Below, piece after piece: positions 24,998-46,900 of a stretch of 64,000 nucleotides of DNA. The DNA comes from Macrostomum lignano (taxonomy: Eukaryota). The notes below the pieces were generated by a model, which saw only the letters and a list, made by a program, of their open reading frames with translations, did not search any database and was not told where the DNA came from. How positions within the stretch are numbered: position 1 is the stretch's first letter; each line of letters opens with the position of its first letter. The position numbers were made by a program, and so were the translations under genes. Where the stretch lies: the NCBI GenBank assembly GCA_002269645.1, contig NIVC01003728.1, positions 16,219-80,218 on the forward strand, written 5' to 3'.

Positions 24998-25019
24998 AGC
25001 TAAGTGCAACAAAGTTCCT

Positions 25020-26203: not shown

Positions 26204-28194
26204 TGATGGGTTTCGACCTTTCAGGCCCCTTGTGAGGAAAGCCTTCGGGCCTCAGGCCTCAGAAATAAATCACTTAGAGACCTGGCCCCCCACTCCTGTC
26301 AGATGGTCAGCCCCATGGTAGCTTGATCGTGTGGCGAGCAGTCTAGGTCCTATAGCTAAGAGAGGGACAGCGAGAGACAAGCAGGGAGAATTTTGAAGGT
26401 AGAAATTAGCTAATCCGCAGACTAAGCTAACTCGCTGCCACCAGCCCGTGCGTCCTGGCTCACCACACCGGGACTCTTGAAATCGGGCTTCCGACTAGAA
26501 GGGGCTTTGCACTTACCTGCCGACTAGTGTCTTTTTGCTGTCAATCTCGAAGTCATAGCCGATGATAAGGGACACTGCTGGGACTAGATCGCATTGGCCA
26601 TGCAGGTACAGAGGGGGCTTGTGCAGGGGATTCTTGCAGTGGCGAGTCTATGGGGTAGCTACATGTACTATTACATTGCTAAATACGAAGATATGTACTT
26701 TTGGCCTTCAACGCGCCAACTAGCCTCTCATAGCGCTGATGATAGACTAACTCGAACTTTAGAGATCTCGCATGATTCATTACCCGAGCCGCTTGGCTAA
26801 CCTAGAGCGCACAAAGTACATCTCTGGCGCCGATTCTGCACTTCTGGCAGTTTTGCTCACTGATTTGGTAGATTGATAGACTGAGAACTGCCTTGCCATT
26901 GGTCCACTGTGACCGGCGCCTACTAGCTTAGCTACTCATCTGAGCCATCGGCGAACAAAGAAATAAAACCGATAAAAATGACTGTTAGATTTAACCTTCT
27001 CCTTAGTTCACTTCACACTTCAGATTGAATTGGAGTTTTAGACTACTAGCAGTATTATTGAATGATTTCTGCCTCAGCAACAGCACTACTGAACAAAATG
27101 AGCAAAAGTGTGCGCCTAATCCAGCTACTGAAACAGGAGACAGACAGGGAATCACCCAATCAAGCAAGTCTAGGTAGCCTCTCACCCAACCAATCAGAAA
27201 CTCAACAGCCGGAGACCAGGTAATCCACAGTGACCGAATCGGCTTGATGCTCTGTAGCTGTAGACTCGGGATGATGCTGATACAATCTTCGCTAATAGCT
27301 AGCAGGTGATGATCTTCGCTTGATGTTCGCTGCTGACGACCGGGGGATTCGTCCTTGATGATGATGGGGGGAAGTCGCAATCCGGGGATCAAGAAACGAC
27401 GGTCGCGCTCCGGGAACCAGAAGTTGCGTGCTGGACCCGAGCAAGAGTTGCGTCCGAGCGGGCCAAAAACTCCGGTTTAAATAGCCGCCAACTGGACCGC
27501 AGTTTGTTATAATGGAACACGTCGATTCTGATTGGCTGAGCCGTTTTGTTAAAATGAGCGCCGAATTTTCTGATTGGCTAAGCTTGTTGCTACCCAGAAT
27601 CACGTGACCGAGAGATCCTATCAGTTCCCACAGGGTCGTAAAAAGATGACAGGTGCGGCCATAAATCACTCAAAGTCGCAACAAAATGATTTATGACTTT
27701 TCGCGTAGGATTGACAGAAATTAATGAAAAATATACATTAGAAAGCTCTTATTAAATAGAAAGTGAAGATAATGAAGAGAAATTGCTAATCGCTAATCCC
27801 AAAGTACTTTTAGGGGTAAAACGCATAGCTGTCAAAGCTGTCACACGCTTGAGTGAATCCGAACAATAGGCTCCGACCTCGTAAATCTTGATGGCCTGTC
27901 AAAATGATGAGAAAAAAGCTACCGCCCGCATCCTCTCAGACCATCTGGCGCCCGTCTCAACACTGAGTGAGGCGCAGGTGGCTGTCAGACCAACTTCGGA
28001 AGCGATGATTTACGACCCAAAAAGCTACGCCTATGTTATTATGACTACTAGTATGGCCAGACATTATATCTAGTATAGATTCTATGACAATTTGCAGAAA
28101 AAGGATAAAAATGCCCCTTGCCCACTGTTAGTAGGCAAGTAAGTTTAGAGCCCATGTGCTAGCGCGGGATTTGGGAAAAAGTGCGTCCTCATCA
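26204..28194 (-). repeat. 3' LTR (1991 bp)
   Basis: Matches 43357-45347 at a constant offset of 17153. Five substitutions seen (near 26478, 26617, 26808, 26856, 27955), all transitions. Confidence 0.95.
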
Positions 28195-28198
28195 TATG

Positions 28199-28211
28199 CC
28201 CCCCCCTATTT
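28199..28211 (-). other. Polypurine tract of the LTR element
   Basis: Minus strand AAATAGGGGGGGG-CATA lies immediately before the TG of the 3' LTR. Confidence 0.85.
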
Positions 28212-30466
28212 GTGAGTTGATCGCAGATTAACTCAAAAACAAAGAAGAAAAATGAGCGCAGTTTTGTACAAAATCGCAGCTAGCACATCACAAAGTTAGT
28301 AAAAATAATAGTTACTCACAAATAGGTACTAAAATATTAAATTAACACGCATCCCAAGAAAGGAAATCCCGAAAGAGAAAGAATTTGGGGAAGGGAAAGA
28401 ATGAAGAAAGAAAGGGATCAAAAGAAAGGTGCTTAAAAATAGATATCGCATTTGCCAATACAGTATTAAGTGCGAGATACATGTAAGGGAATAATAAACA
28501 GATAAATTATTGCCGCGCGAGAAGACATAGTTCAAAATGTGCGAGATGGGGTAAACAGCGCATGTTCAACGAGACTAAGCTTCATTGTTCGCATTCGAGT
28601 CAGTCTCGATTCTACCTGTTAAGCCTCTTGATGGCTTAATTCTTTTGCCGCGCGGCCGACCCGAGCCAGGATGGGCGAGGAGCCTGGGAAATGCGTTGCA
28701 CATTCTCCCCTTCCGCCTGTGGAATCCACGTGCCAGGGGTTGCCGTGCTCATCTGACGGCTGCTGGCGAATGGCGACCCTCAGAGGATTAAGGGACCCTC
28801 GAGTCATCTTTGCTGACTGGCTGAGACGCTGCTGGGGGAGGATGACCTCAACCGCCTCGAGTTCGCAGGGAGATAAAAGCGACTGACCACTCGGGTCATC
28901 CGCAAATTATCATTTGCATCTCCGAGTCCTGCAACTCTCGCAACAACGTTTCGCGCGCCAGCCAAAGCCTCGCCACTGCCGCATTTGCTGACTTCGCACC
29001 GAGCCAGACCAGCCTCCGTAGACCTCCAATCTCCAACTGGTAAGTCTCATCTCAGCTTTGCGATACTCTACCGTCCACTTCCACTCAATCAGACAATCCC
29101 AGACCCATCCCACAGTCTCAGCAACTTCAGGGTACACTCCCTCCTGCTCATTTGCCCATTCAGTGCTGTGTAGGATATACGTATATACTTTAAGATGTAT
29201 TATGAATAGAGTTTCAGATAAGAGGCGGAATAATTTTTAACACTAATGTTAAGTTTTAAAAGTTTCCTTCAAAGATTTTTGTCTTCAAAACTCCGCTTCA
29301 ATCGCATTCTCTTCCAAGTTTAGTTCACACAATCCTATTTTGTTTTACACTCAGTATTACTACGTATCAGTAGTATCGCACGGCCGCGAGTTAAGTTTTC
29401 GAATACAATTAAGAATTTCGTATTAATTCAGGCGGACCACTTGTACTTTATTTAAGATTTTACTAGCTTAATCATTCCTAATATTCACCTATATTAATCA
29501 TCTAATCTGACCTAGTACTAAATTTTGCTTACTATTAGTCTCTTTCTTCGCTTCGGCTCAGTGAGTTTAGTAACACGAGAAGTCCTACATTTCAATTTTA
29601 ACTCAGGCCAAGAATCAATTCCAAGGCTGGCATTGCATGTTCTAATTTTGAAAACATTCATGTCAAATTAGGCAAAATAAACAAGCAATCACATACACGC
29701 ACACGACACATAGTTTCCGCCACCATTTGATGAACTTTCTACGAAAAAGGAGAAAAAACGCAAAACACTACTGATATGGATACAAATGGCATGACACAAC
29801 ATTTATAAAATGAGCAAGCGAGAAATTAAGCATTTTGGTTTTACGCACATGTAAAATAATGACACAACATAGAAATAAATACGCGGGAATAAATAGTAAA
29901 ACAACAGTGAATATAAATATGGAAATGCATTTTCAAAGCACCAGGGGGGTATTTACAGGGGGATCAGGGAGGGTACCAAAGACATTATGAGAAAGCAATT
30001 GTTCACGCAATAAGAGGATATATTTACAAGGGGCATAGCAGCACAAAAAGAAAAGAATAGGGGGTTGAAATTTTGCTTTGGCATGACAAAAATTTGGTTG
30101 AGAATTGAACATGAAAATAGAGGCACAGCTCGCCTACTAACCACTACTTAAGCCGAACGGTTTGAGAAAAAATAGTTTCGCACAGATTTGTTCCCACTAA
30201 GCTGCAGCATTACTACTATTCATAAATTACTTCTCTAAACAAACTATTACCGTATTAATTTCTTTGTGCCAATATTTCTGTTCTTAAATAAACTGCTTTT
30301 CATAACTTATCATTTCATTCATAATTTTTCTTAAATTCCTAACTATTATTACTGATTAATTTGACCTAATCACTCTAGAAGTCCAACCTGTTATAATACT
30401 TTAGCCAAAGAGGGGTGGGCAAGGGGAAACCGAGTTGGGCCCCAAACCTCAAAGTTCGCAAGGAAG

Positions 30467-30979
30467 TCAACAGAATGGGAGCATTTGCCCCAATACTAGT
30501 AAATTTCTAGTGTGATAGTCCAAGACAGCAGGCGCGGCTGCCAGAAAAGAGTTGCCCAACAGATGCCTCGTGGCGGGGTCACTGGCGACTAAAAACATTA
30601 CTGGCATGGTTTCAGCCCCTAGGGTGACAATCAGCTTGGACTGACCCACAATCTCTAATCTATGCCCGCTATAGGAATAGATAGAGACTGTAGGGGCTTC
30701 CAACCTGTCCATGTCATCATTAGTGGCCGCCACAAAGTCTCTGAAGGGCAAGATGGAGACTGCCGATCCAGAATCAATGAGAATTCGGAGTGGCAATCTC
30801 TCTACTTGAACTTTCACATACACGTCAGCTCGAGAGCTTTTAAATGGCATAGCCTTCCTGGGAACAATGAAGTCGGGTATGCAACTCACTTTCCTTTTGC
30901 CACCATTTGCTAAATTTGCCCTTGAAAGTCCAGAAGAGGGGTGAGTGTGGGCGCCACCCATCCCTACTCTCAGTTTTCC
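30467..30979 (-). CDS. Retroviral-type aspartic protease ORF (-1 frame relative to gag); terminates with no downstream RT
   Basis: ILIDSGSAVSIL active-site motif and RHLLGNSFL C-terminal motif. The frame is open back through the gag stop region. Confidence 0.88.
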   Translation of the reverse strand, partial: GKLRVGMGGAHTHPSSGLSRANLANGGKRKVSCIPDFIVPRKAMPFKSSRADVYVKVQVERLPLRILIDSGSAVSILPFRDFVAATNDDMDRLEAPTVSIYSYSGHRLEIVGQSKLIVTLGAETMPVMFLVASDPATRHLLGNSFLAAAPAVLDYHTRNLLVLGQMLPFC

Positions 30980-32319
30980 GACCCGGGCGGGAGATAGAAA
31001 GAGGGCCGCTGTTTCTGTGCTCCAGGCGCCGGGGTTGGCGGGGGCCTCAAATTCTCTTCTCCTGTACTGCTCTCTCCCTGGGTAGGAACATGCAGGGGAG
31101 GCGGGCGCGCGCGTGCACTGTTGCGCAACTGCGGGGGCCGGTAAACCTCAGTTCTTTCAGTCTGCTTGGCCGAGTCACCATAAATCGCGTTCTGCCTCAA
31201 TAGTGCGGGCTTCGCTGACAGATTTTGAGATGAAGGGGGCGGGGGCTTGCCCTCAGGCGGTTGGCTAGCTCGCTCAGTATCTTCTACCACGGTGAGGTCT
31301 CCCTCCCACTGATCTGAGTGGCTTATCATGGCCTGATCAATCCTCTCCGCAACCTGACTCATAGCGCCGTAAATCTTGCCGACGGTTTCATCTAGGCTGT
31401 TTTGACGCTGCTGTAAATCTGCCAGTGCCTCTTCTACTTCCCTTCCTTCCTCTGACTCTAGCATGCGGACCCACCTGCGTTGATATTCTCTGTCGCTGGG
31501 GCGATTCTGATCTCTGCTTCTATCGTCCCTACGCTGATCATATCTGGGCTGGTCTCGCGCTAAGCGCCGGGAAATCTCATCTGCCTCTTGGAGATTCTGC
31601 TGCGCTGCCAGCACTTCATCAATGCTGCGAAACTGTTGCCCTAGCAGCGACTTGCGCACATCTGGGGCGATGTCAGCTGTTTCCAAGTAGGCAAAGATCA
31701 CCTCCGACTCTAACTGTCTAGGACTCATGTCGGGGTAAGCAGAAGCTATCACACTACGCACCATGGCCGAATAGGCGTGGTGATTCTGGCCTGCCTTCTG
31801 TTTTAGATTCCGGACCTTGTTCCTCTTCGCTAGTTCTGAGCTGGCCTCTCCTACCTGACGACCTAACCTTTCTATGAATTCCTCAAAGTCAAGGCCGGGA
31901 TGGAGGGCAATAGCAAGACTCTGCAGATCTGGGGGGAGGAGCGAGATTACTGTGCTCTTCTTCTGCTCTCTGTCCCTAATCTCTTCAGATCTGAGTTTGT
32001 ATTTGACTCTGTCAACCCACTGGGGGAAGCAGGATTCTGCTGGGTTGAATTTCTCAACGCTAATCTTGACACTCTGTGTCTCTCTGCCCAATCCGATAGC
32101 TGCAAGGGCTTGCGCTAATTGGGCTGCCATGTCGGCGGCTTGGGGTTGAGGTGGGGCTCTTTGCGGGGATGACCCGCACTCTGATCGCTCGGGGGAGCCT
32201 GAGCCCTGGGACAAAAAATCGCAGGCAGCTGCAGCGGCGGCTGCTGATCCGTTCCTATTCCCTCTACCTCTTCTGCCTCTACCTCCTGACTTACTGGTAC
32301 TGGAATTACATGTTTCCAT
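30970..32319 (-). CDS. Retrotransposon Gag-like capsid protein (about 449 aa from ATG 32319), no CCHC knuckle
   Basis: Intact ORF between the PBS and the protease. KFNP...W, an MHR-like LKQKAGQNHHAYSAMVRSV segment, a coiled coil and a Pro-rich tail ending PGSEN*. Confidence 0.8.
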   Translation of the reverse strand: METCNSSTSKSGGRGRRGRGNRNGSAAAAAAACDFLSQGSGSPERSECGSSPQRAPPQPQAADMAAQLAQALAAIGLGRETQSVKISVEKFNPAESCFPQWVDRVKYKLRSEEIRDREQKKSTVISLLPPDLQSLAIALHPGLDFEEFIERLGRQVGEASSELAKRNKVRNLKQKAGQNHHAYSAMVRSVIASAYPDMSPRQLESEVIFAYLETADIAPDVRKSLLGQQFRSIDEVLAAQQNLQEADEISRRLARDQPRYDQRRDDRSRDQNRPSDREYQRRWVRMLESEEGREVEEALADLQQRQNSLDETVGKIYGAMSQVAERIDQAMISHSDQWEGDLTVVEDTERASQPPEGKPPPPSSQNLSAKPALLRQNAIYGDSAKQTERTEVYRPPQLRNSARARPPPLHVPTQGESSTGEENLRPPPTPAPGAQKQRPSFYLPPGSEN

Positions 32320-33992
32320 AGTTCGGGCACAACACCAGTTGCCGGGACAGAACAAAAGAATGTGAATCTGAACCGGGGCGGAAAAAATGAATGCAATTGG
32401 CTATTAGCCGAATTTGGGTATCTGCTTCAAAGCAAGACAATGTCACACTTGACTCAAAATTTTTCACACCTAAATTCCTCTTGTCTCTGCCTTGAATCCG
32501 ATCTCGGATTTTCTCGAATTGCTGCTTTTAAACTCACTGATTCTCAACTGGGCTGAGGCCACAGCTTTCCGCAGGCTACTACAGTCTCAGTCTCTCTTTC
32601 TCTCTGAGCGGCTCTTTTTGCTTCCGAATAATTTTAATGGGCTAGCAAATCATGGAGGGTCTCTTCAGCTCTTATTAGCCTAAATTGCAGGCGCCAATAT
32701 GTGGGCACCTCATGTGTATTAGAGCTCTCCTGCGTGGTATCGCCACTAGGAAACCGTCCGGGTGCTGCTACGGCTAGACAGATTCACAATCCCCATCAAG
32801 GCTGATCTTTTAGCGGAACTTGGACGTCTGACCCAGCGCGCCCAGTGGCCCCTCTGTGTAGCTTTCGTCAGCATTGACCGGTGAGGGCGGATTACACCTA
32901 ATAAACGATACTCGCGAACAGACAGATAATACACAAGGAGTTAAGCAGGTCCGTAGTGTAGTGTTCACTCCGCAACAAAACCTTTTGGCACGGTCCCTAA
33001 GAATTTTGATCATAGAAAAAGCTACGGGCAGCAGGAAAGTTTGTCAAATATTATGACCCTACGTTATCGGGTCGGGTATTTTTATAGCGGCGAACCACAG
33101 AAGACATCTGTGTCTTGAGTCGGTAGAGTCTGTCCAGACAAAGCTGCGCTCCCCTCCTCTTGCTATCATAAAAATGAATAGCCACGGCGTTTTCTGCTCT
33201 CTGCAGAATCGTTAACCAGAGCGGTAGCTGGAATTCGCACATACTACCATGGCACCGTGTGGGTAATTCTCTCCGCTTTCTTTACTGTATTTACATTAGA
33301 TACCCCTCCAATTCTAAGAAAGAACCGAAAGGGCAAAAGCAAACTTCCAAACCCTAAATTCCGCAACCAGGAAAAATTACTTGTGCACTGGCAAACTGTA
33401 CTACTGAAAGTAATACCTACACACTTTCCAGACTCCTAGGCTAAGCAGATGGTAAATGTACGAACTTAAAGTAACTTCAGACCTCACAATTCTGTACCCA
33501 AACCCAAAGTAGCGTGGCTGTTCCCGCGTTCCGGTAGCCATCAACCCCAGACATATTTTTCAGGACATGGATGTCTGACCCAGCGCATCCAGAGGCCCAA
33601 CGGCACAGCACTTGCCATTGTTAGCCGGAATACCGAGAATTGCGGTGGGAATTTGAGCTCTCCGTTGCCACTTAAAGCGATTTATACCACCAAAGCCCGA
33701 ATAGCGGACAAAAATTCGTGAGAAGCACTCAGATAGAACACCCCGATTTAAATCGAAATGATACTATGATCACACAGTTCGCTAATCCGACTGTCCCGTA
33801 CTAATCTGCTCCAGAGTATAACCTTTGAACCCAAAACCCGTGAGGCCCTGCGTATGAAACCAAGGCTTCGCACATCCAAAAAGCTGCCTGATTCTAAATT
33901 TTGCAAACAAGACAAAAACTACGAGCGCTGTCAGCATTCTATAATGAACGTTTTGGCCGAGGAAGCATTACCATTCGGATAATGGCCTCTTG

Positions 33993-36900
33993 ACTACTAA
34001 GGGATTCCGAATGGCGCGATTTTGGAGGTGAGGTGGGTGTCAACCCTCCTCGCCTCTCATTGGCTGGCGCCCCGATCACTAGGTGATCGATACCCGTATC
34101 GATATCGGCGACTCGAACCCGCGACCCTCCCCAGCCGCAGGCGCACCTACCGATATTAGATCCCAATAAATCAATCAGATCCCAAATCAATCAGATCCCA
34201 AATCAATCAGATCCCAAGCGCACCCTCCCGAGCCGCAGGCGCCCATGCAGCAGGCGCCCATGCCGCAGGCACCCCGAGTGTACACTCTCCCGATATGTGT
34301 GTACACCGATATGTAGTCATCGATACGGGCCTCTTCCCCTCTCTCACCTACATCTCAACTAGCGAAATCGAACCCAGGTCGCGCCCATACTAGGACACTA
34401 CACGGTTGTGGGGTATAGGGAGCGAGAAGTTTCAACCCTAACGCTGACGCAGCCCTGTACAGTGAGAGTGTACGGGCAGAGAGGGGTGGGGCGGACAGAG
34501 AACCAGCCACTAGGTTGTTATACTGTTGAAGCATAGGGAGCGAGAAGTTTTAACCCCGATGCTGACGCAGCCCTGTACACTGAGCGTGTACGGGCAGAGG
34601 GTGGGTGGAAAGAGATGTGAATAACACAGCCTGCTGCAGGAGCCGGATAGAGAGGCGCATGCTAGGACAGAGAGGTAGTGTGAGTCACACACACCCCACA
34701 GAGAAAGCCATACAGAGGATAGAGAGCTCCCTCCCCAGTTGCAGGGGACAGAGAGGCAGGCAGGGTATGCAGGGGCATGCGAACCGTCAAGGGGCCACGC
34801 GAGGATAGAGTGGAGGAGCAGAGATGTGTTTGGACAGAGAGCCAGCCACGTGTGCGTAGTGTGAGGGAACAGAAACATATGGAGCAGGAGGGAGATAGGA
34901 AGCAAACGCGCAGGGTAAGGGAGCCATGCAGCAGGGAGCAGTGTACAGTGAGACACGGGCAGGGGTGGAGCCGTGCGTGGACAGAGCTGAACGGCACGGT
35001 CAGCTGCAGGAATAGGATGATAGAGAGGCGCGGAGGGGGACAGAGAGCAGTGTGCAGGGTAGGCAGCCACGCAGGCTGGGGAACAGAGAGGCGCGTGTCA
35101 GCCAGTTACAGCCCGGGACAGAGAAGTATGAAGGGGGGCCTGGGACAGAGAAGTATGAAGGGGGGCCTGGGACAGAGTTGCGAGCAAGGCACAGAGAGAG
35201 GTAGGGTCCGGTAGCTATGTATAGGCAGGGACCCACGCGAGGGCAGGACAGGGCATGCAAGGCATGCAAATTACATGCAAGGGCAGTGAGGTGTGCGCGG
35301 AGGGAGACAGAGAGCAGTGTGTAGGGGTAGGTAACAGCAAACTTTAGTAGAGGCGCGTGCGGGGACGGAGAAACCAGTCTGAGCGTACAGAGACGTTACA
35401 GAGAGGTACACAAACAGAGACCAAAGCGGGCAGAGCACGTGTAGGGACAGAGACGTGAGGGAGAATAGACCAAAACACGCTATGTATTTTCAAAAGTTGG
35501 TTTTAGTGCAGCATATTTAATAGCGGGTAGTATAATAGTATGTACATAGTAGGTATAATGGTAGTAATAATAGTAAGTATATTAGCCCAAAAGGTAGGCT
35601 AAAACAGGCTAAACTGTGTGTACGCATCCTCATCACCCCACAAGCCCCCTCTCCCGCCAGACTCACTCTTCCATACCCTCCTGTATTGCTGTATGAAGGA
35701 AAATATAGTGTAAAAATACAGATCTTAACCGTCAGACCGCTGAAATCAGGGCACACTAGAGGGGTTTCGGGGTCTGCATGCTCTATGTAAGCTGTTTCAA
35801 TTATGTTTTGAAAAAACTAGGGGCTTAAATACAACGTTTTATTCAAAAAGTAGGTTATTTTAATGAAATAGCTGACACAATCATTGTCGAGAGTAGAAAT
35901 TTTTATAAGAAACCAGGCATTTTAGCAAAAATAAACCTTCAAACCACATAAAATTGAATAAAAAGCAGACATTTTCAATTATAAACCGCAAGTATTTTAA
36001 TAGAAAAGTAAGCAAACAAGGCACAAAACCAGCAAATTTTACCTTTTTATTTTAATGTTACTGATAAGGTAGAGAGTAGAAACTTGTGAGCTGTACGGAG
36101 TTAGAAAGTATTAACCATTATGTATCGTATGAATTATTAGTTCAGTACCAGCCATTGGTCAAGCGAGCATTTATGAAGTTATTACGAGTGATGAAGGGAT
36201 AGAGAGCTATATACAGGAAGACAGTATCCTTCTAAACCACCACGAACAGATTGCTAATAGAGATAAGCTTTGTCTGTGTGCAGTATGAGTAAGCGAAGGC
36301 GGGGCAAATACTTTTCCACATGCCGGACAGAACAGTATTGTGCTAGGATTTCTCTCGAAATCACGGTACGTTACTAGTTTTTATCACACCATCCAGATGC
36401 GTCAACTAGTCAGCAGTAGTCATTTATATGTTATTAGAACTTACAAACCCAGGTCAAGTAAATATTACAAAGAGTATATTACGTACACACGCCAACTCCG
36501 AATACCAAGCCATACTAGTCTACTTGCAGTGCTCCTGGAGGGAAGGGACGGCGGGGTGTACACCCGGCAGGGTGGGCGTCCAGCGAGTGTACATCTGACA
36601 GGATGGGTGTTCAGCAAGTGTACATCTGACAGGGTGGGCGTTCAGCAAGTGTACCTTCAGCGTCGAGTAGGTGTACACCCGTCAGTGGGGAACTCCACCC
36701 CTCCCACCAATGTCGTGTGCATGCGGTTAGTCAGTATAGTGGTGGGGTAGACGGTGCAGGAAGGAAACCCAGATGCTGACGCTGCCCTGTACAGCGAGCA
36801 ACCAGCCCCCTGTAGCAGGAGGGGGACAGAGAGTGCGTGGAGGCAGTAGGAGATAGAGGACGCTACCCGGCATGTCGCAGCACGCGGCGCGGGACAGAGG

Positions 36901-39900
36901 CAGTGTGTAAGTCACCCCCGCGGAGAGAGCTCCCCTGGCAGGAGGCGCGGGACAGAGAGGCGGTGAATCACACCCCACGGAGAGAGCCGTACAACGAGCT
37001 TCCCCACCCGAGTCCGGTAAATATTACAGAGTATTACGTGCACACACCAGCCCTGAATACCAAGCCATACTAGTCTATCTGCAGTGCTCCCAGAGGGAAG
37101 GGATGGTCAGGAGTTACACACCAAGAATGCATTCATACAAAGAGTACACAACTCGAGCCCAGACACCAAGTCACAGTCTACTTACAGTAGAGATGGTAGA
37201 TTAATAGCAAGATTATATTACAATTAGACCTCTCTAGCACATGAGGAGTGAAATTCAATAATAATTGAATTCAATAATAATACAACATTTAGACGTAGTA
37301 ATTTAATTACAAAATACCACTAACACTGAGCCAACGAATTGTAGGTTACAAAGGAGTTGCCACTCATATGGAAAGCCAGTATAATGCAGGTGTGTATTAT
37401 TAAAACATAGACAAAAACGATGCAGACGTATATACACACTATTGATTTTGTACATGTACATTTCGGCATATTACCACACATCGCGGGCACATATTATATA
37501 TCGGGGGATAGGTTAAAATACACACATCGTAGATGTAGAAGCAGACACAATGCAGGAAAATTATGATACGAGTGTACATATTAGTGCGTAAAAGTATCAT
37601 ATTATGACACCCTGTAGCACATATTGACATAATGCAGGGGAAAATATTGACAGAAATAGTACACAATTGTAGAGGTAACAACCAGCCAACTAGTAAGGGC
37701 ATCCAGCACTTGTTCAGGTTTTTTTTATTTCGAGACGAGTGTCATGCCCCCGCAAGAGATCTTATCAGAAATTTGTTGAACTCCACTGCAACTCTCCCAG
37801 AGCCTCCAAATGGAGTTTTAACACTTGAGGGGATCCCGCTCAATGTACAGTGCGGACGGAGAGGGGTAACAGAAAGCGCTGCATCAGACCGCGGAGCTGC
37901 ATTCCTCCCCGAGGTAGGCGCGTCAGCTCCCACTCCTCATTTAACCATCAAGTAAACTAAAGAAGTCAAGCAGAAAGCCTTACAATCACCCGCAACCAGC
38001 ACAAGTAAGAGTACTTTCCACTAGAGAGCCATAGTGCAAGATTCGCGAGCCAAGTTGAAGAAGCACACCAAATTACACTAAAGACATATGTATTAAAAAG
38101 CATACCGGCACCTCTACAAAAACACAGTATGTACCGATTAAAGTTGCTTTTGGTGCAGTGTATTTAATAAAAAGCAGGTACCTAACACAAAAGTAGGCAT
38201 CAATGCAGTGCACGGGCTAAACTGTATTTACAAACGCAGGGCAACGAACTACACACAATGTAGCGCATAGACATAATTGTACACATAAATGTACGCAATT
38301 TCCGGTATATAGGACCAAATGTACGCAAATGTACACAATGTACACAAACACACACACACTCAGGCGTATTCACAGCAAGAGCTTCCTGCCGATGGCGCCA
38401 TCGCCTGCGGCGATCGGTGCTGCAGGATGCGCTGCAGGATGCGCCTGAGTGTGTGTGTGTTTGTGTGCATTGTGTACATTTGCGTACATTTGGTCCTATA
38501 TACCGGAGATTGCGTACATTTATGTGTACAATTATGTCTATGCGCTACATTGTGTGTAGTTCGTTGCCCTGCGTTTGTAAATACAGTTTAGCCCGTGCAC
38601 TGCATTGATGCCTACTTTTGTGTTAGGTACCTGCTTTTTATTAAATACACTGCACCAAAAGCAACTTTAATCGGTACATACTGTGTTTTTGTAGAGGTGC
38701 CGGTATGCTTTTTAATACATATGTCTTTAGTGTAATTTGGTGTGCTTCTTCAACTTGGCTCGCGAATCTTGCACTATGGCTCTCTAGTGGAAAGTACTCT
38801 TACTTGTGCTGGTTGCGGGTGATTGTAAGGCTTTCTGCTTGACTTCTTTAGTTTACTTGATGGTTAAATGAGGAGTGGGAGCTGACGCGCCTACCTCGGG
38901 GAGGAATGCAGCTCCGCGGTCTGATGCAGCGCTTTCTGTTACCCCTCTCCGTCCGCACTGTACATTGAGCGGGATCCCCTCAAGTGTTAAAACTCCCATT
39001 TGGAGGCTCTGGGAGAGTTGCAGTGGAGTTCAACAAATTTCTGATAAGATCTCTTGCGGGGGCATGACACTCGTCTCGAAATAAAAAAAACCTGAACAAG
39101 TGCTGGATGCCCTTACTAGTTGGCTGGTTGTTACCTCTACAATTGTGTACTATTTCTGTCAATATTTTCCCCTGCATTATGTCAATATGTGCTACAGGGT
39201 GTCATAATATGATACTTTTACGCACTAATATGTACACTCGTATCATAATTTTCCTGCATTGTGTCTGCTTCTACATCTACGATGTGTGTATTTTAACCTA
39301 TCCCCCGATATATAATATGTGCCCGCGATGTGTGGTAATATGCCGAAATGTACATGTACAAAATCAATAGTGTGTATATACGTCTGCATCGTTTTTGTCT
39401 ATGTTTTAATAATACACACCTGCATTATACTGGCTTTCCATATGAGTGGCAACTCCTTTGTAACCTACAATTCGTTGGCTCAGTGTTAGTGGTATTTTGT
39501 AATTAAATTACTACGTCTAAATGTTGTATTATTATTGAATTCAATTATTATTGAATTTCACTCCTCATGTGCTAGAGAGGTCTAATTGTAATATAATCTT
39601 GCTATTAATCTACCATCTCTACTGTAAGTAGACTGTGACTTGGTGTCTGGGCTCGAGTTGTGTACTCTTTGTATGAATGCATTCTTGGTGTGTAACTCCT
39701 GACCATCCCTTCCCTCTGGGAGCACTGCAGATAGACTAGTATGGCTTGGTATTCAGGGCTGGTGTGTGCACGTAATACTCTGTAATATTTACCGGACTCG
39801 GGTGGGGAAGCTCGTTGTACGGCTCTCTCCGTGGGGTGTGATTCACCGCCTCTCTGTCCCGCGCCTCCTGCCAGGGGAGCTCTCTCCGCGGGGGTGACTT

Positions 39901-42814
39901 ACACACTGCCTCTGTCCCGCGCCGCGTGCTGCGACATGCCGGGTAGCGTCCTCTATCTCCTACTGCCTCCACGCACTCTCTGTCCCCCTCCTGCTACAGG
40001 GGGCTGGTTGCTCGCTGTACAGGGCAGCGTCAGCATCTGGGTTTCCTTCCTGCACCGTCTACCCCACCACTATACTGACTAACCGCATGCACACGACATT
40101 GGTGGGAGGGGTGGAGTTCCCCACTGACGGGTGTACACCTACTCGACGCTGAAGGTACACTTGCTGAACGCCCACCCTGTCAGATGTACACTTGCTGAAC
40201 ACCCATCCTGTCAGATGTACACTCGCTGGACGCCCACCCTGCCGGTGTACACCCCGCCGTCCCTTCCCTCCAGGAGCACTGCAAGTAGACTAGTATGGCT
40301 TGGTATTCGGAGTTGGCGTGTGTACGTAATATACTCTTTGTAATATTTACTTGACCTGGGTTTGTAAGTTCTAATAACATATAAATGACTACTGCTGACT
40401 AGTTGACGCATCTGGATGGTGTGATAAAAACTAGTAACGTACCGTGATTTCGAGAGAAATCCTAGCACAATACTGTTCTGTCCGGCATGTGGAAAAGTAT
40501 TTGCCCCGCCTTCGCTTACTCATACTGCACACAGACAAAGCTTATCTCTATTAGCAATCTGTTCGTGGTGGTTTAGAAGGATACTGTCTTCCTGTATATA
40601 GCTCTCTATCCCTTCATCACTCGTAATAACTTCATAAATGCTCGCTTGACCAATGGCTGGTACTGAACTAATAATTCATACGATACATAATGGTTAATAC
40701 TTTCTAACTCCGTACAGCTCACAAGTTTCTACTCTCTACCTTATCAGTAACATTAAAATAAAAAGGTAAAATTTGCTGGTTTTGTGCCTTGTTTGCTTAC
40801 TTTTCTATTAAAATACTTGCGGTTTATAATTGAAAATGTCTGCTTTTTATTCAATTTTATGTGGTTTGAAGGTTTATTTTTGCTAAAATGCCTGGTTTCT
40901 TATAAAAATTTCTACTCTCGACAATGATTGTGTCAGCTATTTCATTAAAATAACCTACTTTTTGAATAAAACGTTGTATTTAAGCCCCTAGTTTTTTCAA
41001 AACATAATTGAAACAGCTTACATAGAGCATGCAGACCCCGAAACCCCTCTAGTGTGCCCTGATTTCAGCGGTCTGACGGTTAAGATCTGTATTTTTACAC
41101 TATATTTTCCTTCATACAGCAATACAGGAGGGTATGGAAGAGTGAGTCTGGCGGGAGAGGGGGCTTGTGGGGTGATGAGGATGCGTACACACAGTTTAGC
41201 CTGTTTTAGCCTACCTTTTGGGCTAATATACTTACTATTATTACTACCATTATACCTACTATGTACATACTATTATACTACCCGCTATTAAATATGCTGC
41301 ACTAAAACCAACTTTTGAAAATACATAGCGTGTTTTGGTCTATTCTCCCTCACGTCTCTGTCCCTACACGTGCTCTGCCCGCTTTGGTCTCTGTTTGTGT
41401 ACCTCTCTGTAACGTCTCTGTACGCTCAGACTGGTTTCTCCGTCCCCGCACGCGCCTCTACTAAAGTTTGCTGTTACCTACCCCTACACACTGCTCTCTG
41501 TCTCCCTCCGCGCACACCTCACTGCCCTTGCATGTAATTTGCATGCCTTGCATGCCCTGTCCTGCCCTCGCGTGGGTCCCTGCCTATACATAGCTACCGG
41601 ACCCTACCTCTCTCTGTGCCTTGCTCGCAACTCTGTCCCAGGCCCCCTTCATACTTCTCTGTCCCAGGCCCCCCTTCATACTTCTCTGTCCCGGGCTGTA
41701 ACTGGCTGACACGCGCCTCTCTGTTCCCCAGCCTGCGTGGCTGCCTACCCTGCACACTGCTCTCTGTCCCCCTCCGCGCCTCTCTATCATCCTATTCCTG
41801 CAGCTGACCGTGCCGTTCAGCTCTGTCCACGCACGGCTCCACCCCTGCCCGTGTCTCACTGTACACTGCTCCCTGCTGCATGGCTCCCTTACCCTGCGCG
41901 TTTGCTTCCTATCTCCCTCCTGCTCCATATGTTTCTGTTCCCTCACACTACGCACACGTGGCTGGCTCTCTGTCCAAACACATCTCTGCTCCTCCACTCT
42001 ATCCTCGCGTGGCCCCTTGACGGTTCGCATGCCCCTGCATACCCTGCCTGCCTCTCTGTCCCCTGCAACTGGGGAGGGAGCTCTCTATCCTCTGTATGGC
42101 TTTCTCTGTGGGGTGTGTGTGACTCACACTACCTCTCTGTCCTAGCATGCGCCTCTCTATCCGGCTCCTGCAGCAGGCTGTGTTATTCACATCTCTTTCC
42201 ACCCACCCTCTGCCCGTACACGCTCAGTGTACAGGGCTGCGTCAGCATCGGGGTTAAAACTTCTCGCTCCCTATGCTTCAACAGTATAACAACCTAGTGG
42301 CTGGTTCTCTGTCCGCCCCACCCCTCTCTGCCCGTACACTCTCACTGTACAGGGCTGCGTCAGCGTTAGGGTTGAAACTTCTCGCTCCCTATACCCCACA
42401 ACCGTGTAGTGTCCTAGTATGGGCGCGACCTGGGTTCGATTTCGCTAGTTGAGATGTAGGTGAGAGAGGGGAAGAGGCCCGTATCGATGACTACATATCG
42501 GTGTACACACATATCGGGAGAGTGTACACTCGGGGTGCCTGCGGCATGGGCGCCTGCTGCATGGGCGCCTGCGGCTCGGGAGGGTGCGCTTGGGATCTGA
42601 TTGATTTGGGATCTGATTGATTTGGGATCTGATTGATTTATTGGGATCTAATATCGGTAGGTGCGCCTGCGGCTGGGGAGGGTCGCGGGTTCGAGTCGCC
42701 GATATCGATACGGGTATCGATCACCTAGTGATCGGGGCGCCAGCCAATGAGAGGCGAGGAGGGTTGACACCCACCTCACCTCCAAAATCGCGCCATTCGG
42801 AATCCCTTAGTAGT
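33993..42814. mobile_element. 8.8-kb palindromic (fold-back) insertion: arms 33993-38369 and 38439-42814, 69-bp apex spacer, 6-bp TSD
   Basis: The arms are reverse complements throughout (mirror ORF pairs in the ORF track). Termini ACTACTAAGGGATTCCG / CGGAATCCCTTAGTAGT. Flanked by the direct repeat CTCTTG (33987-33992, 42815-42820). No recognisable coding sequence. Confidence 0.9.
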
Positions 42815-43336
42815 CTCTTGTCTACACGACAAAAATTAATAGCTTAATTTCGAGTGATCAGTTCGAAACTTTTCTGTTTAGCAAAAGTACAAGAACTATC
42901 CTAAGTCTCTATTTTCCGCATAATTAGCTGGCTGAAATCAAAACTGGAGAACTAAGCAGAGAGCCTAGATAACTGATCAAGCTGAGAGAGTTATATGTGC
43001 GGGGTTGATTTTTTTATATGCTCTGGCTTTTTGAATTTTTATAATTTTTTTGGTTGATTTTTTTGGAATAGGCATGCATTTAATGGTAAGCAATTCATAC
43101 TAGTAATTTTTTTGGTTCCAGTAGCATAAATTTTCTGTGCATTTTTGGACTCTCATAATTCAGACTTGAAAAGCTATCGCAACTGACTACTTACAGTAAT
43201 CTAAAAGAAACCTAAATTCCCAATTTAGAAATCTAAACGGCGCAACTCGATTCTATTATTTTGTTACAATTTGCCATTTACCAGCCATCACTACCGGTGA
43301 GCACTTTACCACTTCCTACCGGCTAGTGTTTACCAT

Positions 43337-43354
43337 ATCCCACCGCTGCCACCA
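43337..43354 (-). other. Primer-binding site complementary to tRNA-Leu 3' end
   Basis: Minus strand TGGTGGCAGCGGTGGGAT, 2 nt after the LTR CA. It is the 18-nt complement of ...ATCCCACCGCTGCCA-CCA, the 3' end of metazoan tRNA-Leu(AAG/TAG). Confidence 0.9.
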
Positions 43355-43356
43355 TT

Positions 43357-45347
43357 TGATGGGTTTCGACCTTTCAGGCCCCTTGTGAGGAAAGCCTTCG
43401 GGCCTCAGGCCTCAGAAATAAATCACTTAGAGACCTGGCCCCCCACTCCTGTCAGATGGTCAGCCCCATGGTAGCTTGATCGTGTGGCGAGCAGTCTAGG
43501 TCCTATAGCTAAGAGAGGGACAGCGAGAGACAAGCAGGGAGAATTTTGAAGGTAGAAATTAGCTAATCCGCAGACTAAGCTAACTCGCTGCCACCAGCCC
43601 GTGCGTCCTGGCTCACCACACCGGGACTCTCGAAATCGGGCTTCCGACTAGAAGGGGCTTTGCACTTACCTGCCGACTAGTGTCTTTTTGCTGTCAATCT
43701 CGAAGTCATAGCCGATGATAAGGGACACTGCTGGGACTAGATCGCATTGGCCATGCAGGTACAGAGGGGACTTGTGCAGGGGATTCTTGCAGTGGCGAGT
43801 CTATGGGGTAGCTACATGTACTATTACATTGCTAAATACGAAGATATGTACTTTTGGCCTTCAACGCGCCAACTAGCCTCTCATAGCGCTGATGATAGAC
43901 TAACTCGAACTTTAGAGATCTCGCATGATTCATTACCCGAGCCGCTTGGCTAACCTAGAGTGCACAAAGTACATCTCTGGCGCCGATTCTGCACTTCTGG
44001 CAGTTTTGTTCACTGATTTGGTAGATTGATAGACTGAGAACTGCCTTGCCATTGGTCCACTGTGACCGGCGCCTACTAGCTTAGCTACTCATCTGAGCCA
44101 TCGGCGAACAAAGAAATAAAACCGATAAAAATGACTGTTAGATTTAACCTTCTCCTTAGTTCACTTCACACTTCAGATTGAATTGGAGTTTTAGACTACT
44201 AGCAGTATTATTGAATGATTTCTGCCTCAGCAACAGCACTACTGAACAAAATGAGCAAAAGTGTGCGCCTAATCCAGCTACTGAAACAGGAGACAGACAG
44301 GGAATCACCCAATCAAGCAAGTCTAGGTAGCCTCTCACCCAACCAATCAGAAACTCAACAGCCGGAGACCAGGTAATCCACAGTGACCGAATCGGCTTGA
44401 TGCTCTGTAGCTGTAGACTCGGGATGATGCTGATACAATCTTCGCTAATAGCTAGCAGGTGATGATCTTCGCTTGATGTTCGCTGCTGACGACCGGGGGA
44501 TTCGTCCTTGATGATGATGGGGGGAAGTCGCAATCCGGGGATCAAGAAACGACGGTCGCGCTCCGGGAACCAGAAGTTGCGTGCTGGACCCGAGCAAGAG
44601 TTGCGTCCGAGCGGGCCAAAAACTCCGGTTTAAATAGCCGCCAACTGGACCGCAGTTTGTTATAATGGAACACGTCGATTCTGATTGGCTGAGCCGTTTT
44701 GTTAAAATGAGCGCCGAATTTTCTGATTGGCTAAGCTTGTTGCTACCCAGAATCACGTGACCGAGAGATCCTATCAGTTCCCACAGGGTCGTAAAAAGAT
44801 GACAGGTGCGGCCATAAATCACTCAAAGTCGCAACAAAATGATTTATGACTTTTCGCGTAGGATTGACAGAAATTAATGAAAAATATACATTAGAAAGCT
44901 CTTATTAAATAGAAAGTGAAGATAATGAAGAGAAATTGCTAATCGCTAATCCCAAAGTACTTTTAGGGGTAAAACGCATAGCTGTCAAAGCTGTCACACG
45001 CTTGAGTGAATCCGAACAATAGGCTCCGACCTCGTAAATCTTGATGGCCTGTCAAAATGATGAGAAAAAAGCTACCGCCCGCATCCTCTCAGACCATCTG
45101 GCGCCCGCCTCAACACTGAGTGAGGCGCAGGTGGCTGTCAGACCAACTTCGGAAGCGATGATTTACGACCCAAAAAGCTACGCCTATGTTATTATGACTA
45201 CTAGTATGGCCAGACATTATATCTAGTATAGATTCTATGACAATTTGCAGAAAAAGGATAAAAATGCCCCTTGCCCACTGTTAGTAGGCAAGTAAGTTTA
45301 GAGCCCATGTGCTAGCGCGGGATTTGGGAAAAAGTGCGTCCTCATCA
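43357..45347 (-). repeat. 5' LTR (1991 bp)
   Basis: Adjacent to the PBS. TG...CA termini. Near-identical to 26204-28194. Confidence 0.95.
44629..44730 (-). promoter_or_regulatory. Putative LTR U3 promoter: two CCAAT boxes followed by a TATTTAAA TATA-like box
   Basis: Minus strand TAGCCAATCAG (44726-30) ... CAGCCAATCAG (44684-88) ... GGCTATTTAAACC (44629-36). Oriented toward the PBS and gag. Confidence 0.55.
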
Positions 45348-46119
45348 GAATATCGAACGTTTATAGCCTGACGAGTGAATAATTATTAGCCGAATGTGGT
45401 TAACGATTTATCAGACTACTCTTAATTTCAATATAAGATAAATTCTCAGTTTTGCAGCGTCCATAAAAAACTGAACACACCTGGAATACTTTTAGTCAGC
45501 ACCGTCTGGATCGGTGATAGATATCAGAGTTTGCAGTTGCCAATATAAATGTCGCACCAACCCGATGCCGGAGGGCCAACTCTCACAAGTAAAGTTGCTG
45601 CTGCATGTAAATATTTGAGATTTTGTAAAACCTGATCTGAATTCGCTCAAATATAGAAACCCAACCAGGGTTTTATCACGGAAAACTGACTTTAACGGAA
45701 TTTGCACATTTTTTAATACAATTCTGTATATCACTGCATGGGTGCCAATTCTACAGAAATTAAATTCTACAGAAATTCTACAGAAATTGACAAACAGTAG
45801 AGTATTAAATTTATATTAGATTTACTTTTTTTCTAGGAAGTACGATGACTTGTCTAAATTCCAAAAAGCCCTACGAAGTTTGCATGCTTATGGCAATAGT
45901 GTGATTTCATGACGCTTCTGTGAATTTTCACACGTTGTCTAATGTAGAAAAGGTGAATTATATCTTCTTGGTACAGCAATCAGTCAAGCTATGAAGATGC
46001 TTTGAGCTACCAAGAATGTCGCTTTTATCTCTAAAATAATCTCTAAACATGCAGTTTTAAAGATCCTTGTCATTTAGTGCGAGTAAATCGCTTTGACAAT
46101 GAAGGTTTTTTGCGACCCA

Positions 46120-46364: not shown

Positions 46365-46900
46365 TGCCTACTAGGCAATAGCAATTCCCCCATGCATAAG
46401 TCTTTTTTAGTCAGTCGACAGTTGGGGGTTCTTTTATGGTTTTACCCTAGCCCTAATTTAACTCCAATCCTGCTAAAACCTCAGCATTTCAGCCATTCCC
46501 CCATGAGCAAAAGCATTTCAATAATTCCCCACATAAGTCTTGGCATCTCAGCAGCTCGGCCCCCATTTGTCTTGACGTCTTAGCAATTCCCAGTGAGTCT
46601 TATATTCGACAGAGCGCTTCTTTTTTGGTTAACATGGTGATTCTTTTTTCGTTCTTTCTTTCATTAATTTTTCTTTAAAACTAGCTCTTAAATAAATTTG
46701 CCATGGTTCACTAACAGTTTAGCAATGGTTCACCTGCACTGTTTCGCACAATCCCTATGCAGATAGCCACAAGTCTACATATTTCTCAATAAATCGAAAC
46801 CATTTAAAACGTTTGCAACTTGCTAAAAATTGCACAGTTAAAATTGATTTGCAATCTTCTCATACTTATTACTTTTTTGCATAAGTCAGAATAGCACAGC

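What the first reader, a model, noticed from the sequence alone, without database searches (positions are those of the whole stretch)
33993..42814. 8.8-kb almost perfect palindromic mobile element with a 6-bp TSD and ACT-ACT termini: candidate snap-back Polinton/Maverick-like derivative
Seen in the sequence: arms of 4377 and 4376 bp around a 69-bp spacer, only three 1-nt homopolymer indels and three substitutions noticed, termini ACTACTAAGGG...CCCTTAGTAGT, an exact flanking direct repeat CTCTTG, non-palindromic flanks belonging to the host LTR leader, and no transposase, polymerase or capsid ORF. Established: 6-bp TSDs, long TIRs and short terminal micro-repeats are Polinton/Maverick hallmarks (retroviral-type integrase, protein-primed PolB with sliding-back initiation), although their usual ends are AG..CT. 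IS3EU also makes 6-bp TSDs but has TAY..RTA ends. Inference: a fold-back genome made by template switching, analogous to snap-back defective viral genomes, was integrated in trans. Alternatively it is an undescribed family whose TIRs are far longer than normal. A 4-bp TSD (TCTT) reading with GAC..GTC ends is possible but needs more coincidences.
Basis: partly seen in the sequence, partly recalled or inferred. Interest (0 to 1): 0.92.

Follow-up and report, generated by a model that had tools for sequence, protein, structure and literature searches.

The report
Giant hairpin transposon inside flatworm retrotransposon
An 8.8-kb, gene-less, almost perfectly palindromic mobile element has recently inserted into a young retrotransposon of a flatworm-like genome; it looks like one transposon end copied back on itself, and its 6-bp target duplication and doubled ACT end resemble Maverick/Polinton elements without proving membership.

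Summary
Window 33993-42814 is an 8,822-bp palindrome with arms of 4,377 and 4,376 bp around a 69-nt centre. It has ACTACT...AGTAGT ends and an exact CTCTTG repeat on both flanks. It sits 536 bp downstream of the 5' LTR of a minus-strand, non-autonomous LTR retrotransposon in an animal genome whose best protein match is Macrostomum.

The arms carry no recognisable coding sequence. Outside the centre they show no substitution, so they are younger than the host LTR pair, which differs by 5 transitions. All three substitutions lie in the innermost 70 bp, and the "spacer" itself folds as an imperfect continuation of the stem. This gradient points to snap-back self-priming at a pre-existing short imperfect inverted repeat on a linear molecule ending at ACTACT, followed by integration in trans.

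The Maverick/Polinton link is only partly supported. A 6-bp duplication and a doubled terminal trinucleotide fit, and Polinton-type insertions are reported in flatworms. However, the triplet is the complement of the published one, the arms are three times longer than any reported TIR, no Maverick gene or remnant is present, and no relative could be retrieved. A 4-bp duplication remains a possible reading. Verdict: a real fold-back non-autonomous element, partner unresolved, moderately interesting.

The parts
33987..33992 (.). Left copy of the flanking direct repeat CTCTTG (6-bp target-site duplication; alternative 4-bp reading TCTT at 33988-33991)
   Evidence: Read directly. Identical to 42815-42820. 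Chance probability 2.4e-4.
33993..42814 (.). The whole palindromic element, 8,822 bp
33993..38369 (+). Left arm, 4,377 bp, non-coding. Modular: G+C-rich subterminal part, purine-rich GGGACAGAGA-motif zone around 34500-35500, A+T-rich blocks, short tandem arrays
   Evidence: composition and k-mers; tandem repeats; no protein-family match.
33993..33998 (+). Terminal ACTACT, a trinucleotide repeated twice. Its mirror AGTAGT is at 42809-42814
   Evidence: Chance of a doubled triplet is 1/64. Compare the Maverick end motifs and the terminal reiteration needed for jumping-back.
34006..34014 (+). Subterminal 9-mer TCCGAATGG (mirror copy 42793-42801). The only other copy in the window is at 33971-33979 (-), 14 bp outside the left end
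   Evidence: Post hoc p about 0.01.
34168..34217 (+). Subterminal 16-bp tandem repeat, 3 copies (mirror 42590-42639)
38300..38369 (+). Innermost 70 bp of the left arm. With its partner 38439-38508 it holds all three arm-to-arm substitutions (each T on the left against C in the reverse complement of the right arm)
38370..38438 (+). 69-nt centre. Not exactly palindromic but largely self-complementary: an imperfect hairpin tip containing a 14-bp perfect palindrome and a 12-bp unit repeated 2.2 times
   Evidence: fold of 38290-38518: -115.4 kcal/mol, z = -22.9, stem continues into the centre.
38439..42814 (-). Right arm, 4,376 bp, reverse complement of the left arm
42815..42820 (.). Right copy of the flanking direct repeat CTCTTG
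26204..45347 (-). Host element: LTR retrotransposon on the minus strand, flanked by GAAT (26200-26203 and 45348-45351). LTRs 26204-28194 and 43357-45347. TGG-starting primer-binding-site-like run next to 43356 and purine run next to 28195. Open gag-like ORF 30970-32355 and open protease-like ORF 30467-30961. No reverse transcriptase, RNase H or integrase detected
   Evidence: (gag-asp_proteas, E 5e-4, below the Pfam cut-off).

Best explanation
This is a real, very recent insertion of a non-autonomous, non-coding fold-back DNA element, and both of its halves are the same end.

Proposed origin (inferred): a linear progenitor molecule had its physical end at ACTACT... and contained, about 4.4 kb in, a short imperfect inverted repeat with a stem of roughly 70-100 bp. 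A DNA strand ending just past that repeat snapped back on itself. Its 3' end was then extended along its own 5' part until it ran off the terminus. This yields a hairpin and, once made double-stranded, a palindrome with two identical ACTACT ends. Everything copied is identical between the arms, and only the old imperfect repeat keeps its mismatches.

Proposed integration (inferred from the duplication): with two equivalent ends and no genes, the element was inserted in trans by an enzyme that cuts the target with a 6-bp stagger. The site was the leader of an already resident LTR retrotransposon.

The partner enzyme is unresolved. The leading single candidate is a Maverick/Polinton-type integrase and replication system (my estimate about 0.35-0.4), on the strength of the 6-bp duplication and the doubled terminal triplet. 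An undescribed or cut-and-paste family is about as likely.

Likely consequences (inference): the host retrotransposon copy is disabled. Transcription from its 5' LTR, 0.54 kb upstream, would run into a 4.4-kb hairpin.
For: Shown:
- Exact palindrome with defined ends and a 6-bp flanking repeat in otherwise unrelated, unique flanks.
- The flanks are one LTR-retrotransposon leader.
- The arms have 0 substitutions in 4,306 bp outside the centre, where 10.8 would be expected at the divergence of the host LTR pair (P = 2e-5). The palindrome is therefore younger than the host element.
- All 3 substitutions lie in the innermost 70 bp: 4.3% divergence, 17 times the LTR value, with random-placement p = 4e-6.
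- The 69-nt centre folds as an imperfect continuation of the stem.
- No coding capacity.
- The same window contains other young elements with clean duplications, for example a hAT with an 8-bp duplication. The assembly therefore resolves insertions at base level, and the LTR pair shows no indel errors.

For the Maverick candidate:
- 6-bp duplications and 6-bp end motifs built from a repeated 2-3-nt unit, including one type that starts with AC (PMC8097293).
- A terminal reiteration is what protein-primed replication needs for sliding or jumping back (PMC5175343).
- Orthopolintovirales-type insertions are reported in rhabditophoran flatworms (bioRxiv 10.1101/2025.04.19.649669).
Against: - Only one copy is available. 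No relative, empty site or autonomous partner could be retrieved, so transposition rests on a single duplication.
- The duplication can also be read as 4 bp (TCTT) with G...C ends.
- Three 1-nt indels between the arms could be true mutations or consensus errors.
- A palindrome gets symmetric ends automatically, so the 'TIRs' are not independent evidence for a transposase.

Against the Maverick candidate specifically:
- The triplet is ACT, not the published AGT.
- The arms are three times the longest reported TIR (1,447 bp).
- 4.4 kb measured from a Maverick end should contain genes, yet no remnant is detectable.
- No Maverick gene occurs in the 64-kb window.
Confidence: 0.72

Rival explanations
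1. It is a fold-back derivative of an ordinary cut-and-paste (DDE) transposon family, either undescribed or one of the few families with 6-bp or 4-bp duplications. It would have formed in place or elsewhere by abortive gap repair. After excision, repair synthesis copied a sister copy from one end, switched template at the internal short inverted repeat, copied back out, and re-annealed through the terminal repeat. No protein-primed replication is involved.
For: - The same footprint of a perfect copy outside an old imperfect repeat is expected.
- The arms are non-coding and modular with short tandem arrays, as in classical fold-back elements.
- The window is rich in active-looking cut-and-paste elements: a hAT with an intact 937-aa ORF and a Tc1/mariner-like element.
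- The 4-bp reading is possible.
- The ACT triplet does not match published Maverick ends.
Against: - The terminal sequence does not match the hAT in the window (CAGTGG ends, 8-bp duplication).
- By my own knowledge it also does not match the end patterns of IS3EU (TAY..RTA), Ginger (TGTNR), hAT (YARNG) or Transib.
- 6-bp duplications are rare among cut-and-paste superfamilies.
- The doubled terminal triplet would be a 1/64 coincidence.
Confidence: 0.35
2. It is an assembly artefact. A fold-back chimeric long read, or a mis-join, created or inflated an inverted duplication that does not exist as such in the genome.
For: - Near-perfect long palindromes are a known failure mode of long-read data (own knowledge).
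- The three arm differences outside the centre are 1-nt homopolymer indels, typical of consensus error.
- No independent assembly or read data could be consulted.
Against: - An artefact would not end exactly at symmetric bases flanked by a 6-bp direct repeat, with two different unique flanks that together make one retrotransposon leader.
- The centre is a structured, imperfect hairpin with nearby substitutions, not a clean junction.
- Elsewhere the assembly is base-accurate: the LTR pair has 0 indels in 1,991 bp.
Confidence: 0.07
3. It is not a transposon. Palindromic extrachromosomal DNA, for example a hairpin-capped break product that was then replicated, was captured at a staggered chromosome break, and fill-in produced the short flanking repeat.
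For: - Palindrome formation nucleated by short inverted repeats is a general DNA-repair outcome (own knowledge: Tetrahymena rDNA, yeast and mammalian palindromic amplification).
- Symmetric ends follow automatically from a palindrome.
- There is only one copy in the window.
Against: - A clean 6-bp duplication with no deletion or filler at either junction is atypical of end-joining capture.
- The end carries a doubled triplet and a subterminal motif that recurs next to the target, which looks like a recognised terminus.
- The arm matches no host sequence in the window.
Confidence: 0.06

Closest known systems
Maverick/Polinton (polintovirus-like) elements
   Same: Both have a 6-bp target-site duplication, terminal inverted repeats, and an extreme terminus made of a short unit repeated: (AGT)2, (AG)3 or (AC)3A in vertebrates and (ACT)2 here. 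The first base is A in all. Elements of this kind are reported in rhabditophoran flatworms.
   Different: The triplet is the complement of the published one. The arms are 4.4 kb against TIRs of 46-1,447 bp. The total is 8.8 kb against 12.7-24.6 kb. None of the defining genes or their remnants is present, and almost the whole element is inverted repeat.
Fold-back type DNA transposons (Drosophila FB, Galileo/P superfamily, sea-urchin TU, nematode Tc4; named from my own knowledge, not retrieved here)
   Same: Both are non-autonomous elements whose inverted repeats make up nearly their whole length. They have a modular, partly tandem-repetitive arm structure, are flanked by a duplication, and form a long hairpin as a single strand.
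   Different: Those families give 9-bp (FB), 7-bp (Galileo), 8-bp (TU) or TNA (Tc4) duplications and have other termini. Their arms are mostly arrays of short repeats and usually diverged. Here the arms are largely unique sequence and essentially identical over 4.3 kb.
Snap-back or hairpin derivatives of protein-primed linear replicons (adenovirus incomplete genomes with inverted left ends; hairpin and palindromic derivatives of the yeast killer linear plasmid; own knowledge, papers not held in the library)
   Same: One genome end is duplicated in inverted orientation around a short non-palindromic centre. The resulting molecule has two identical origins or ends and depends on helper functions.
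   Different: Those are extrachromosomal molecules observed in infected cells or yeast cytoplasm. Here the structure is integrated in a chromosome with a target duplication, and no link to a polymerase-bearing parent is shown.
Large palindromes nucleated by short inverted repeats (Tetrahymena rDNA palindrome; palindromic amplification in yeast and mammalian cells; own knowledge)
   Same: Both have a non-palindromic centre of tens of bases bounded by an older short inverted repeat, with perfect arms beyond it.
   Different: Those are products of chromosome breaks or programmed processing, not discrete insertions with a target-site duplication.
IS3EU and Dada superfamilies (6- or 6-7-bp duplications; own knowledge)
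   Same: The duplication length is compatible.
   Different: IS3EU ends are TAY..RTA. Dada inserts specifically into small-RNA genes. Neither applies here (ACT..AGT ends, target in an LTR-retrotransposon leader).

Membership tests
Maverick/Polinton | [quoted passage not shown] | tested here: not met
   No Pfam hit in any of the 66 arm segments of at least 40 aa or in the larger ORFs. No such gene occurs elsewhere in the window. A non-autonomous derivative need not carry them, so this excludes 'autonomous member' only.
Maverick/Polinton | Capsid-morphogenesis module (major and minor capsid proteins, ATPase, protease) | tested here: not met
   no match.
Maverick/Polinton | 6-bp target-site duplication | tested here: inconclusive
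   CTCTTG is exact on both sides. However, a 4-bp reading with G...C ends fits the same bases, and only one copy is available.
Maverick/Polinton | Conserved 6-bp end motif: 5'-(AGT)2//(ACT)2-3', (AG)3//(CT)3 or (AC)3A//T(GT)3 | tested here: not met
   The ends are 5'-(ACT)2//(AGT)2-3'. The architecture is the same (unit repeated, first base A) but the sequence differs from every published type.
Maverick/Polinton | TIRs of tens to about 1,500 bp flanking a 13-25-kb body | tested here: not met
   The arms are 4,376-4,377 bp with a 69-nt centre and a total of 8,822 bp.
Maverick/Polinton | Non-autonomous membership by the Repbase rule: same duplication length and terminal positions 1-11 matching a family member with at most 1 mismatch | not testable with these tools
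   No eukaryotic repeat library or host genome is available. The terminal 22-mer is absent from the viral, metagenome and prokaryote collections.
Fold-back elements (FB / Galileo type) | Inverted repeats occupying most of the element, no coding capacity in most copies | tested here: met
   99.2% of the element is inverted repeat, and it has no coding capacity.
Fold-back elements (FB / Galileo type) | Family-specific duplication length (9 bp for FB, 7 bp for Galileo; own knowledge) and termini | tested here: not met
   The duplication is 6 bp (or 4 bp).
hAT (the autonomous element present in the window) | 8-bp duplication and shared termini with the resident transposase-encoding copy | tested here: not met
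   The resident hAT (9893-13698) has CAGTGGCGGATCCAGG ends and an 8-bp duplication, GGCTATAC. It shows no similarity to the ACTACT ends.
IS3EU / Dada | TAY..RTA ends (IS3EU); insertion into small-RNA genes (Dada); own knowledge | tested here: not met
   The ends are ACT..AGT, and the target is a retrotransposon leader with no tRNA or Rfam match.

The most novel reading that the evidence does not exclude
The element is an integrated snap-back 'defective genome' of a Maverick/Polinton-like virus-like element of flatworms. During protein-primed, strand-displacing replication of a linear genome, one ACTACT end was copied back on itself. The resulting gene-less two-ended palindrome was then integrated by the helper's integrase. 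It would be a chromosomal fossil showing that these elements pass through a linear, self-replicating stage in an animal, and that defective-interfering-like derivatives can be integrated. It would also reveal a new (ACT)2 end type.
Probability: 0.33. Interest if true: 0.75.

Novelty: new variant of a known kind. Interest (0 to 1): 0.52.

Why it matters
Fold-back elements are known, but their origin is rarely visible. Here the footprint is unusually clean. The arms are perfect, mismatches are confined to the innermost 70 bp, and the tip is an imperfect hairpin. The event can also be dated against the host LTR pair. Together these make a textbook-quality record of how a two-ended mobile element can be regenerated from a single end.

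If genome-wide copies link the ACTACT termini to Maverick/Polinton genes, this would be sequence evidence for a linear replicative stage and for defective, helper-dependent derivatives of these virus-like elements in an animal. It would also widen the catalogue of their end motifs.

If instead the partner is a DDE transposase, it defines a new family with a rare 6-bp duplication in a poorly studied phylum. Either way, an 8.8-kb perfect hairpin just downstream of an LTR promoter is a candidate source of long double-stranded RNA.

Tried and rejected
1. Other copies in the window. The terminal 22-mer (up to 3 mismatches) and 11-mer (up to 1 mismatch) occur only at the two ends, plus one weak internal 11-mer at 37689 and its mirror. 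A permissive BLAST of the arm against the rest of the window gave nothing.
2. Public collections. The terminal 22-mer is absent from metagenome, viral and prokaryotic genome contigs. The predicted empty-site 26-mer is absent from metagenomes.
3. Exact-protein look-ups of two arm ORFs, the GPCR and the hAT ORF were not on record. A homology search with the longest arm reading frame gave 0 hits. The species is evidently not in the collections: the best GPCR hit is Macrostomum lignano at 54%.
4. Coding remnants. Pfam and PHROGs scans of every arm segment of at least 40 aa found nothing credible. The best was the SBP domain at E = 0.002 among 66 queries, which is noise.
5. tRNA and Rfam scans for SINE- or RNA-like modules found none, although short T-arm-like strings are visible by eye around 34113 and 34368.
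6. The resident hAT as autonomous partner was rejected because its termini and duplication length differ.
7. The Kapitonov & Jurka 2006 paper could not be read. Maverick end motifs were taken from PMC8097293 instead.
8. The third homology search (gag, to find sister LTR copies with an empty site) was not spent, because the species is absent from the collection and leaders diverge fast.
9. Resemblance of the centre to sequencing adapters was not tested, because no comparator is available from the tools.

Full report
**1. Observation**

The inverted-repeat scan and a self-BLAST of the window show that 33992-42815 pairs with its own reverse complement at 99.57% identity. A global alignment of 33993-42814 with its reverse complement resolves the structure:
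- Left arm 33993-38369 (4,377 bp).
- Centre 38370-38438 (69 nt).
- Right arm 38439-42814 (4,376 bp).
- The arms differ by three 1-nt indels in short homopolymers and by three substitutions.

The ends read ACTACTAAGGGATTCCGAATGG... and its complement. CTCTTG lies immediately outside both ends, which has a chance probability of 2.4e-4.

One base further out on each side (G and C) also pairs. The same letters can therefore be read as a 4-bp duplication (TCTT) with G...C ends. Both readings predict the same empty site, so only additional copies can decide between them.

**2. Context**

The window is animal DNA. It holds two intron-less rhodopsin-type GPCR ORFs, a multi-CUB-domain gene, a hAT transposase ORF and a retroviral-type integrase fragment. 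The best database match of one GPCR is a Macrostomum lignano protein at 54% identity, with molluscs and amphioxus following. No near-identical protein is on record. The source is therefore probably a flatworm whose genome is not in the searchable collections.

The palindrome lies inside an LTR retrotransposon:
- A 1,991-bp direct repeat occupies 26204-28194 and 43357-45347, with TG..CA ends, flanked by GAAT on both sides.
- A TGG-starting run next to 43356 and a purine run next to 28195 place the element on the minus strand.
- An open gag-like ORF (30970-32355) and an open protease-like ORF (30467-30961; weak gag-asp_proteas match) follow.
- No reverse transcriptase or integrase is detectable, so the host element is itself non-autonomous.
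- The palindrome sits 536 bp downstream of the 5' LTR, in the leader.

**3. Content of the arms**

There is no long ORF. None of the 66 stop-to-stop segments of at least 40 aa in one arm gives a credible Pfam or PHROG match. The best E-value is 0.002 among 66 queries. There is no tRNA or Rfam match.

The arm is modular:
- A G+C-rich subterminal 500 bp with a 16-bp unit repeated 3 times and several CGATA-type short repeats.
- A purine-rich kilobase peppered with GGGACAGAGA.
- A+T-rich blocks.
- A 31-bp unit repeated 3.2 times.
- Many TGTACA motifs.

It resembles nothing else in the window.

**4. Age**

The two LTRs differ by 5 transitions and no indel (0.25%). At that divergence the 4,306 arm positions outside the centre should show about 10.8 substitutions, but they show none (P = 2e-5). 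The palindrome, or at least its arm identity, is therefore younger than the integration of the host element. That fits an insertion into a resident copy. It also argues against the palindrome having been carried through reverse transcription.

**5. Footprint of formation**

All three substitutions lie within the innermost 70 bp of the arms. That is 4.3% divergence, 17 times the LTR value, and the probability of this placement at random is 4e-6.

The 69-nt centre is not an arbitrary spacer. Folded as a single strand, 38290-38518 forms one continuous stem that runs on into the centre with bulges and ends in a small loop (-115.4 kcal/mol, z = -22.9). It contains a 14-bp perfect palindrome and a 12-bp unit repeated 2.2 times.

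The structure is thus perfect outside, slightly imperfect near the centre, and quite imperfect at the tip. This gradient is what one expects if an older, short, imperfect inverted repeat served as the place where a strand folded back and primed on itself. Everything synthesised after that is an exact copy, and only the old repeat retains its mismatches.

For synthesis to stop exactly at the terminal A, the template must have had a physical end there. That points to a linear extrachromosomal molecule: an excised transposon or a linear replicating genome. The alternative is gap-repair synthesis that re-anneals through the terminal repeat. These steps are inference. The gradient itself is shown.

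**6. Integration**

The element has no genes and two equivalent ends, so it must have been inserted by a protein supplied in trans. The 6-bp repeat implies a 6-bp staggered cut.

One unexplained detail may bear on target choice. The subterminal 9-mer TCCGAATGG (positions 14-22 of each end) occurs only once more in the 64-kb window. That copy lies 14 bp outside the left end, in the orientation of a right end. Post hoc p is about 0.01.

**7. Comparison with known systems**

Points in favour of a Maverick/Polinton link:
- According to Barreat and Katzourakis (PMC8097293), intact vertebrate Mavericks have 6-bp duplications, TIRs of 46-1,447 bp, and conserved 6-bp end motifs built from a repeated short unit: 5'-(AGT)2//(ACT)2-3', 5'-(AG)3//(CT)3-3', and 5'-(AC)3A//T(GT)3-3' in a swamp eel.
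- Such terminal reiterations allow protein-primed polymerases to initiate internally and slide or jump back, as with the adenovirus 3'-GTAGTA (PMC5175343).
- Our ends, 5'-(ACT)2//(AGT)2-3', have the same architecture and the same first base.
- Polinton-type insertions are reported in rhabditophoran flatworms.

Points against membership:
- The triplet is the complement of the published one.
- The arms are three times the longest reported TIR.
- The first 4.4 kb of a Maverick should carry genes, yet no remnant is present.
- No Maverick gene is in the window.
- The Repbase criterion for assigning a non-autonomous element (same duplication length plus an 11-base terminal match) cannot be applied without a repeat library or the host genome.

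I therefore rate 'works like, and may be mobilised by, a Maverick-type system' at about one in three and do not file the element as a member.

Other comparators:
- Structurally the closest known kind is the fold-back class of DNA transposons (FB, Galileo, TU, Tc4; own knowledge). It differs from these in duplication length, termini and the near-identity and mostly unique sequence of its arms.
- The resident hAT (9893-13698, 8-bp duplication GGCTATAC, CAGTGG ends) is not its partner.
- IS3EU, Dada and Ginger do not fit by ends or target (and own knowledge).

**8. Rivals**

- A cut-and-paste family with abortive gap repair explains the same footprint and is about as likely as the Maverick route.
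- An assembly artefact is unlikely (about 0.07). The structure ends at symmetric bases with a duplication between two different unique flanks that together form one leader. The centre is structured rather than a blunt junction. The assembly shows no indel noise in the LTR pair. It cannot be excluded without reads.
- Capture of non-transposon palindromic DNA at a staggered break is possible but does not explain the terminal and subterminal motifs.

**9. What could not be done**

No relative, empty site or partner could be retrieved from any collection. The 6-bp versus 4-bp question and the family assignment therefore remain open.

**10. Verdict**

I classify it as a new variant of a known kind (fold-back non-autonomous element) with an unusually legible origin footprint. 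Interest is about 0.5.

Noticed in passing
window 33971-33979 (-), 14 bp left of the insertion: The only extra copy in the window of the element's subterminal 9-mer TCCGAATGG lies just outside the left end, oriented like a right end (expected 0.43 copies per window; post hoc p about 0.01). It may reflect target choice near an end-like motif, or chance.
   Followed up: partly
window 9893-13698 (-): An apparently intact hAT transposon: 17-bp perfect TIRs (CAGTGGCGGATCCAGG...), 8-bp duplication GGCTATAC, and an open 937-aa ORF with DUF4371 and hAT dimerisation domains. It looks recently active.
   Followed up: partly
window 26204-45347 (-): The host LTR retrotransposon has 2-kb LTRs (5 transitions apart) and open gag-like and protease-like ORFs, but no detectable reverse transcriptase, RNase H or integrase. 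It is a young non-autonomous LTR element with a leader of about 2.2 kb.
   Followed up: partly
window 54044-55589: A Tc1/mariner-like element about 1.5 kb long, with roughly 104-bp inverted ends (97% identical) and an ORF (54927-55331, -) carrying HTH_32/HTH_23/Tc3-type DNA-binding domains.
   Followed up: no
window 24171-25300: Two adjacent minisatellite arrays (18-bp period, more than 20 copies; 24-bp period, about 8 copies) lie about 0.9 kb upstream of the LTR element. Further arrays occur at 18495-18815, 46887-47371 and 48767-49013.
   Followed up: no
window 2370-8616 (+): A run of at least eight ORF segments, each with a CUB domain, probably exons of one multi-CUB gene. Two intron-less rhodopsin-family GPCR ORFs lie at 15656-17044 (+) and 51567-52646 (-). 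The latter is adenosine-receptor-like, with a best hit to Macrostomum lignano at 54%.
   Followed up: partly
window 37689-37699 (+) and mirror 39110-39120 (-): An internal near-copy (10 of 11 bases) of the terminal 11-mer, ACTAGTAAGGG, lies about 680 bp from the centre in each arm. It is probably chance (0.8 such matches expected per window).
   Followed up: no
window 34113-34131 and 34368-34386: Short strings resembling the reverse complement of a tRNA T-arm (TCGAACCC...) in the subterminal region suggest old SINE-like debris. ARAGORN and Rfam found nothing.
   Followed up: partly
window 38300, 38341, 38367 versus the right arm: All three arm-to-arm substitutions are transitions with T on the left arm, so on the + strand the hairpin would carry three G-T wobble pairs rather than A-C mismatches (1 in 4 by chance).
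   Followed up: no
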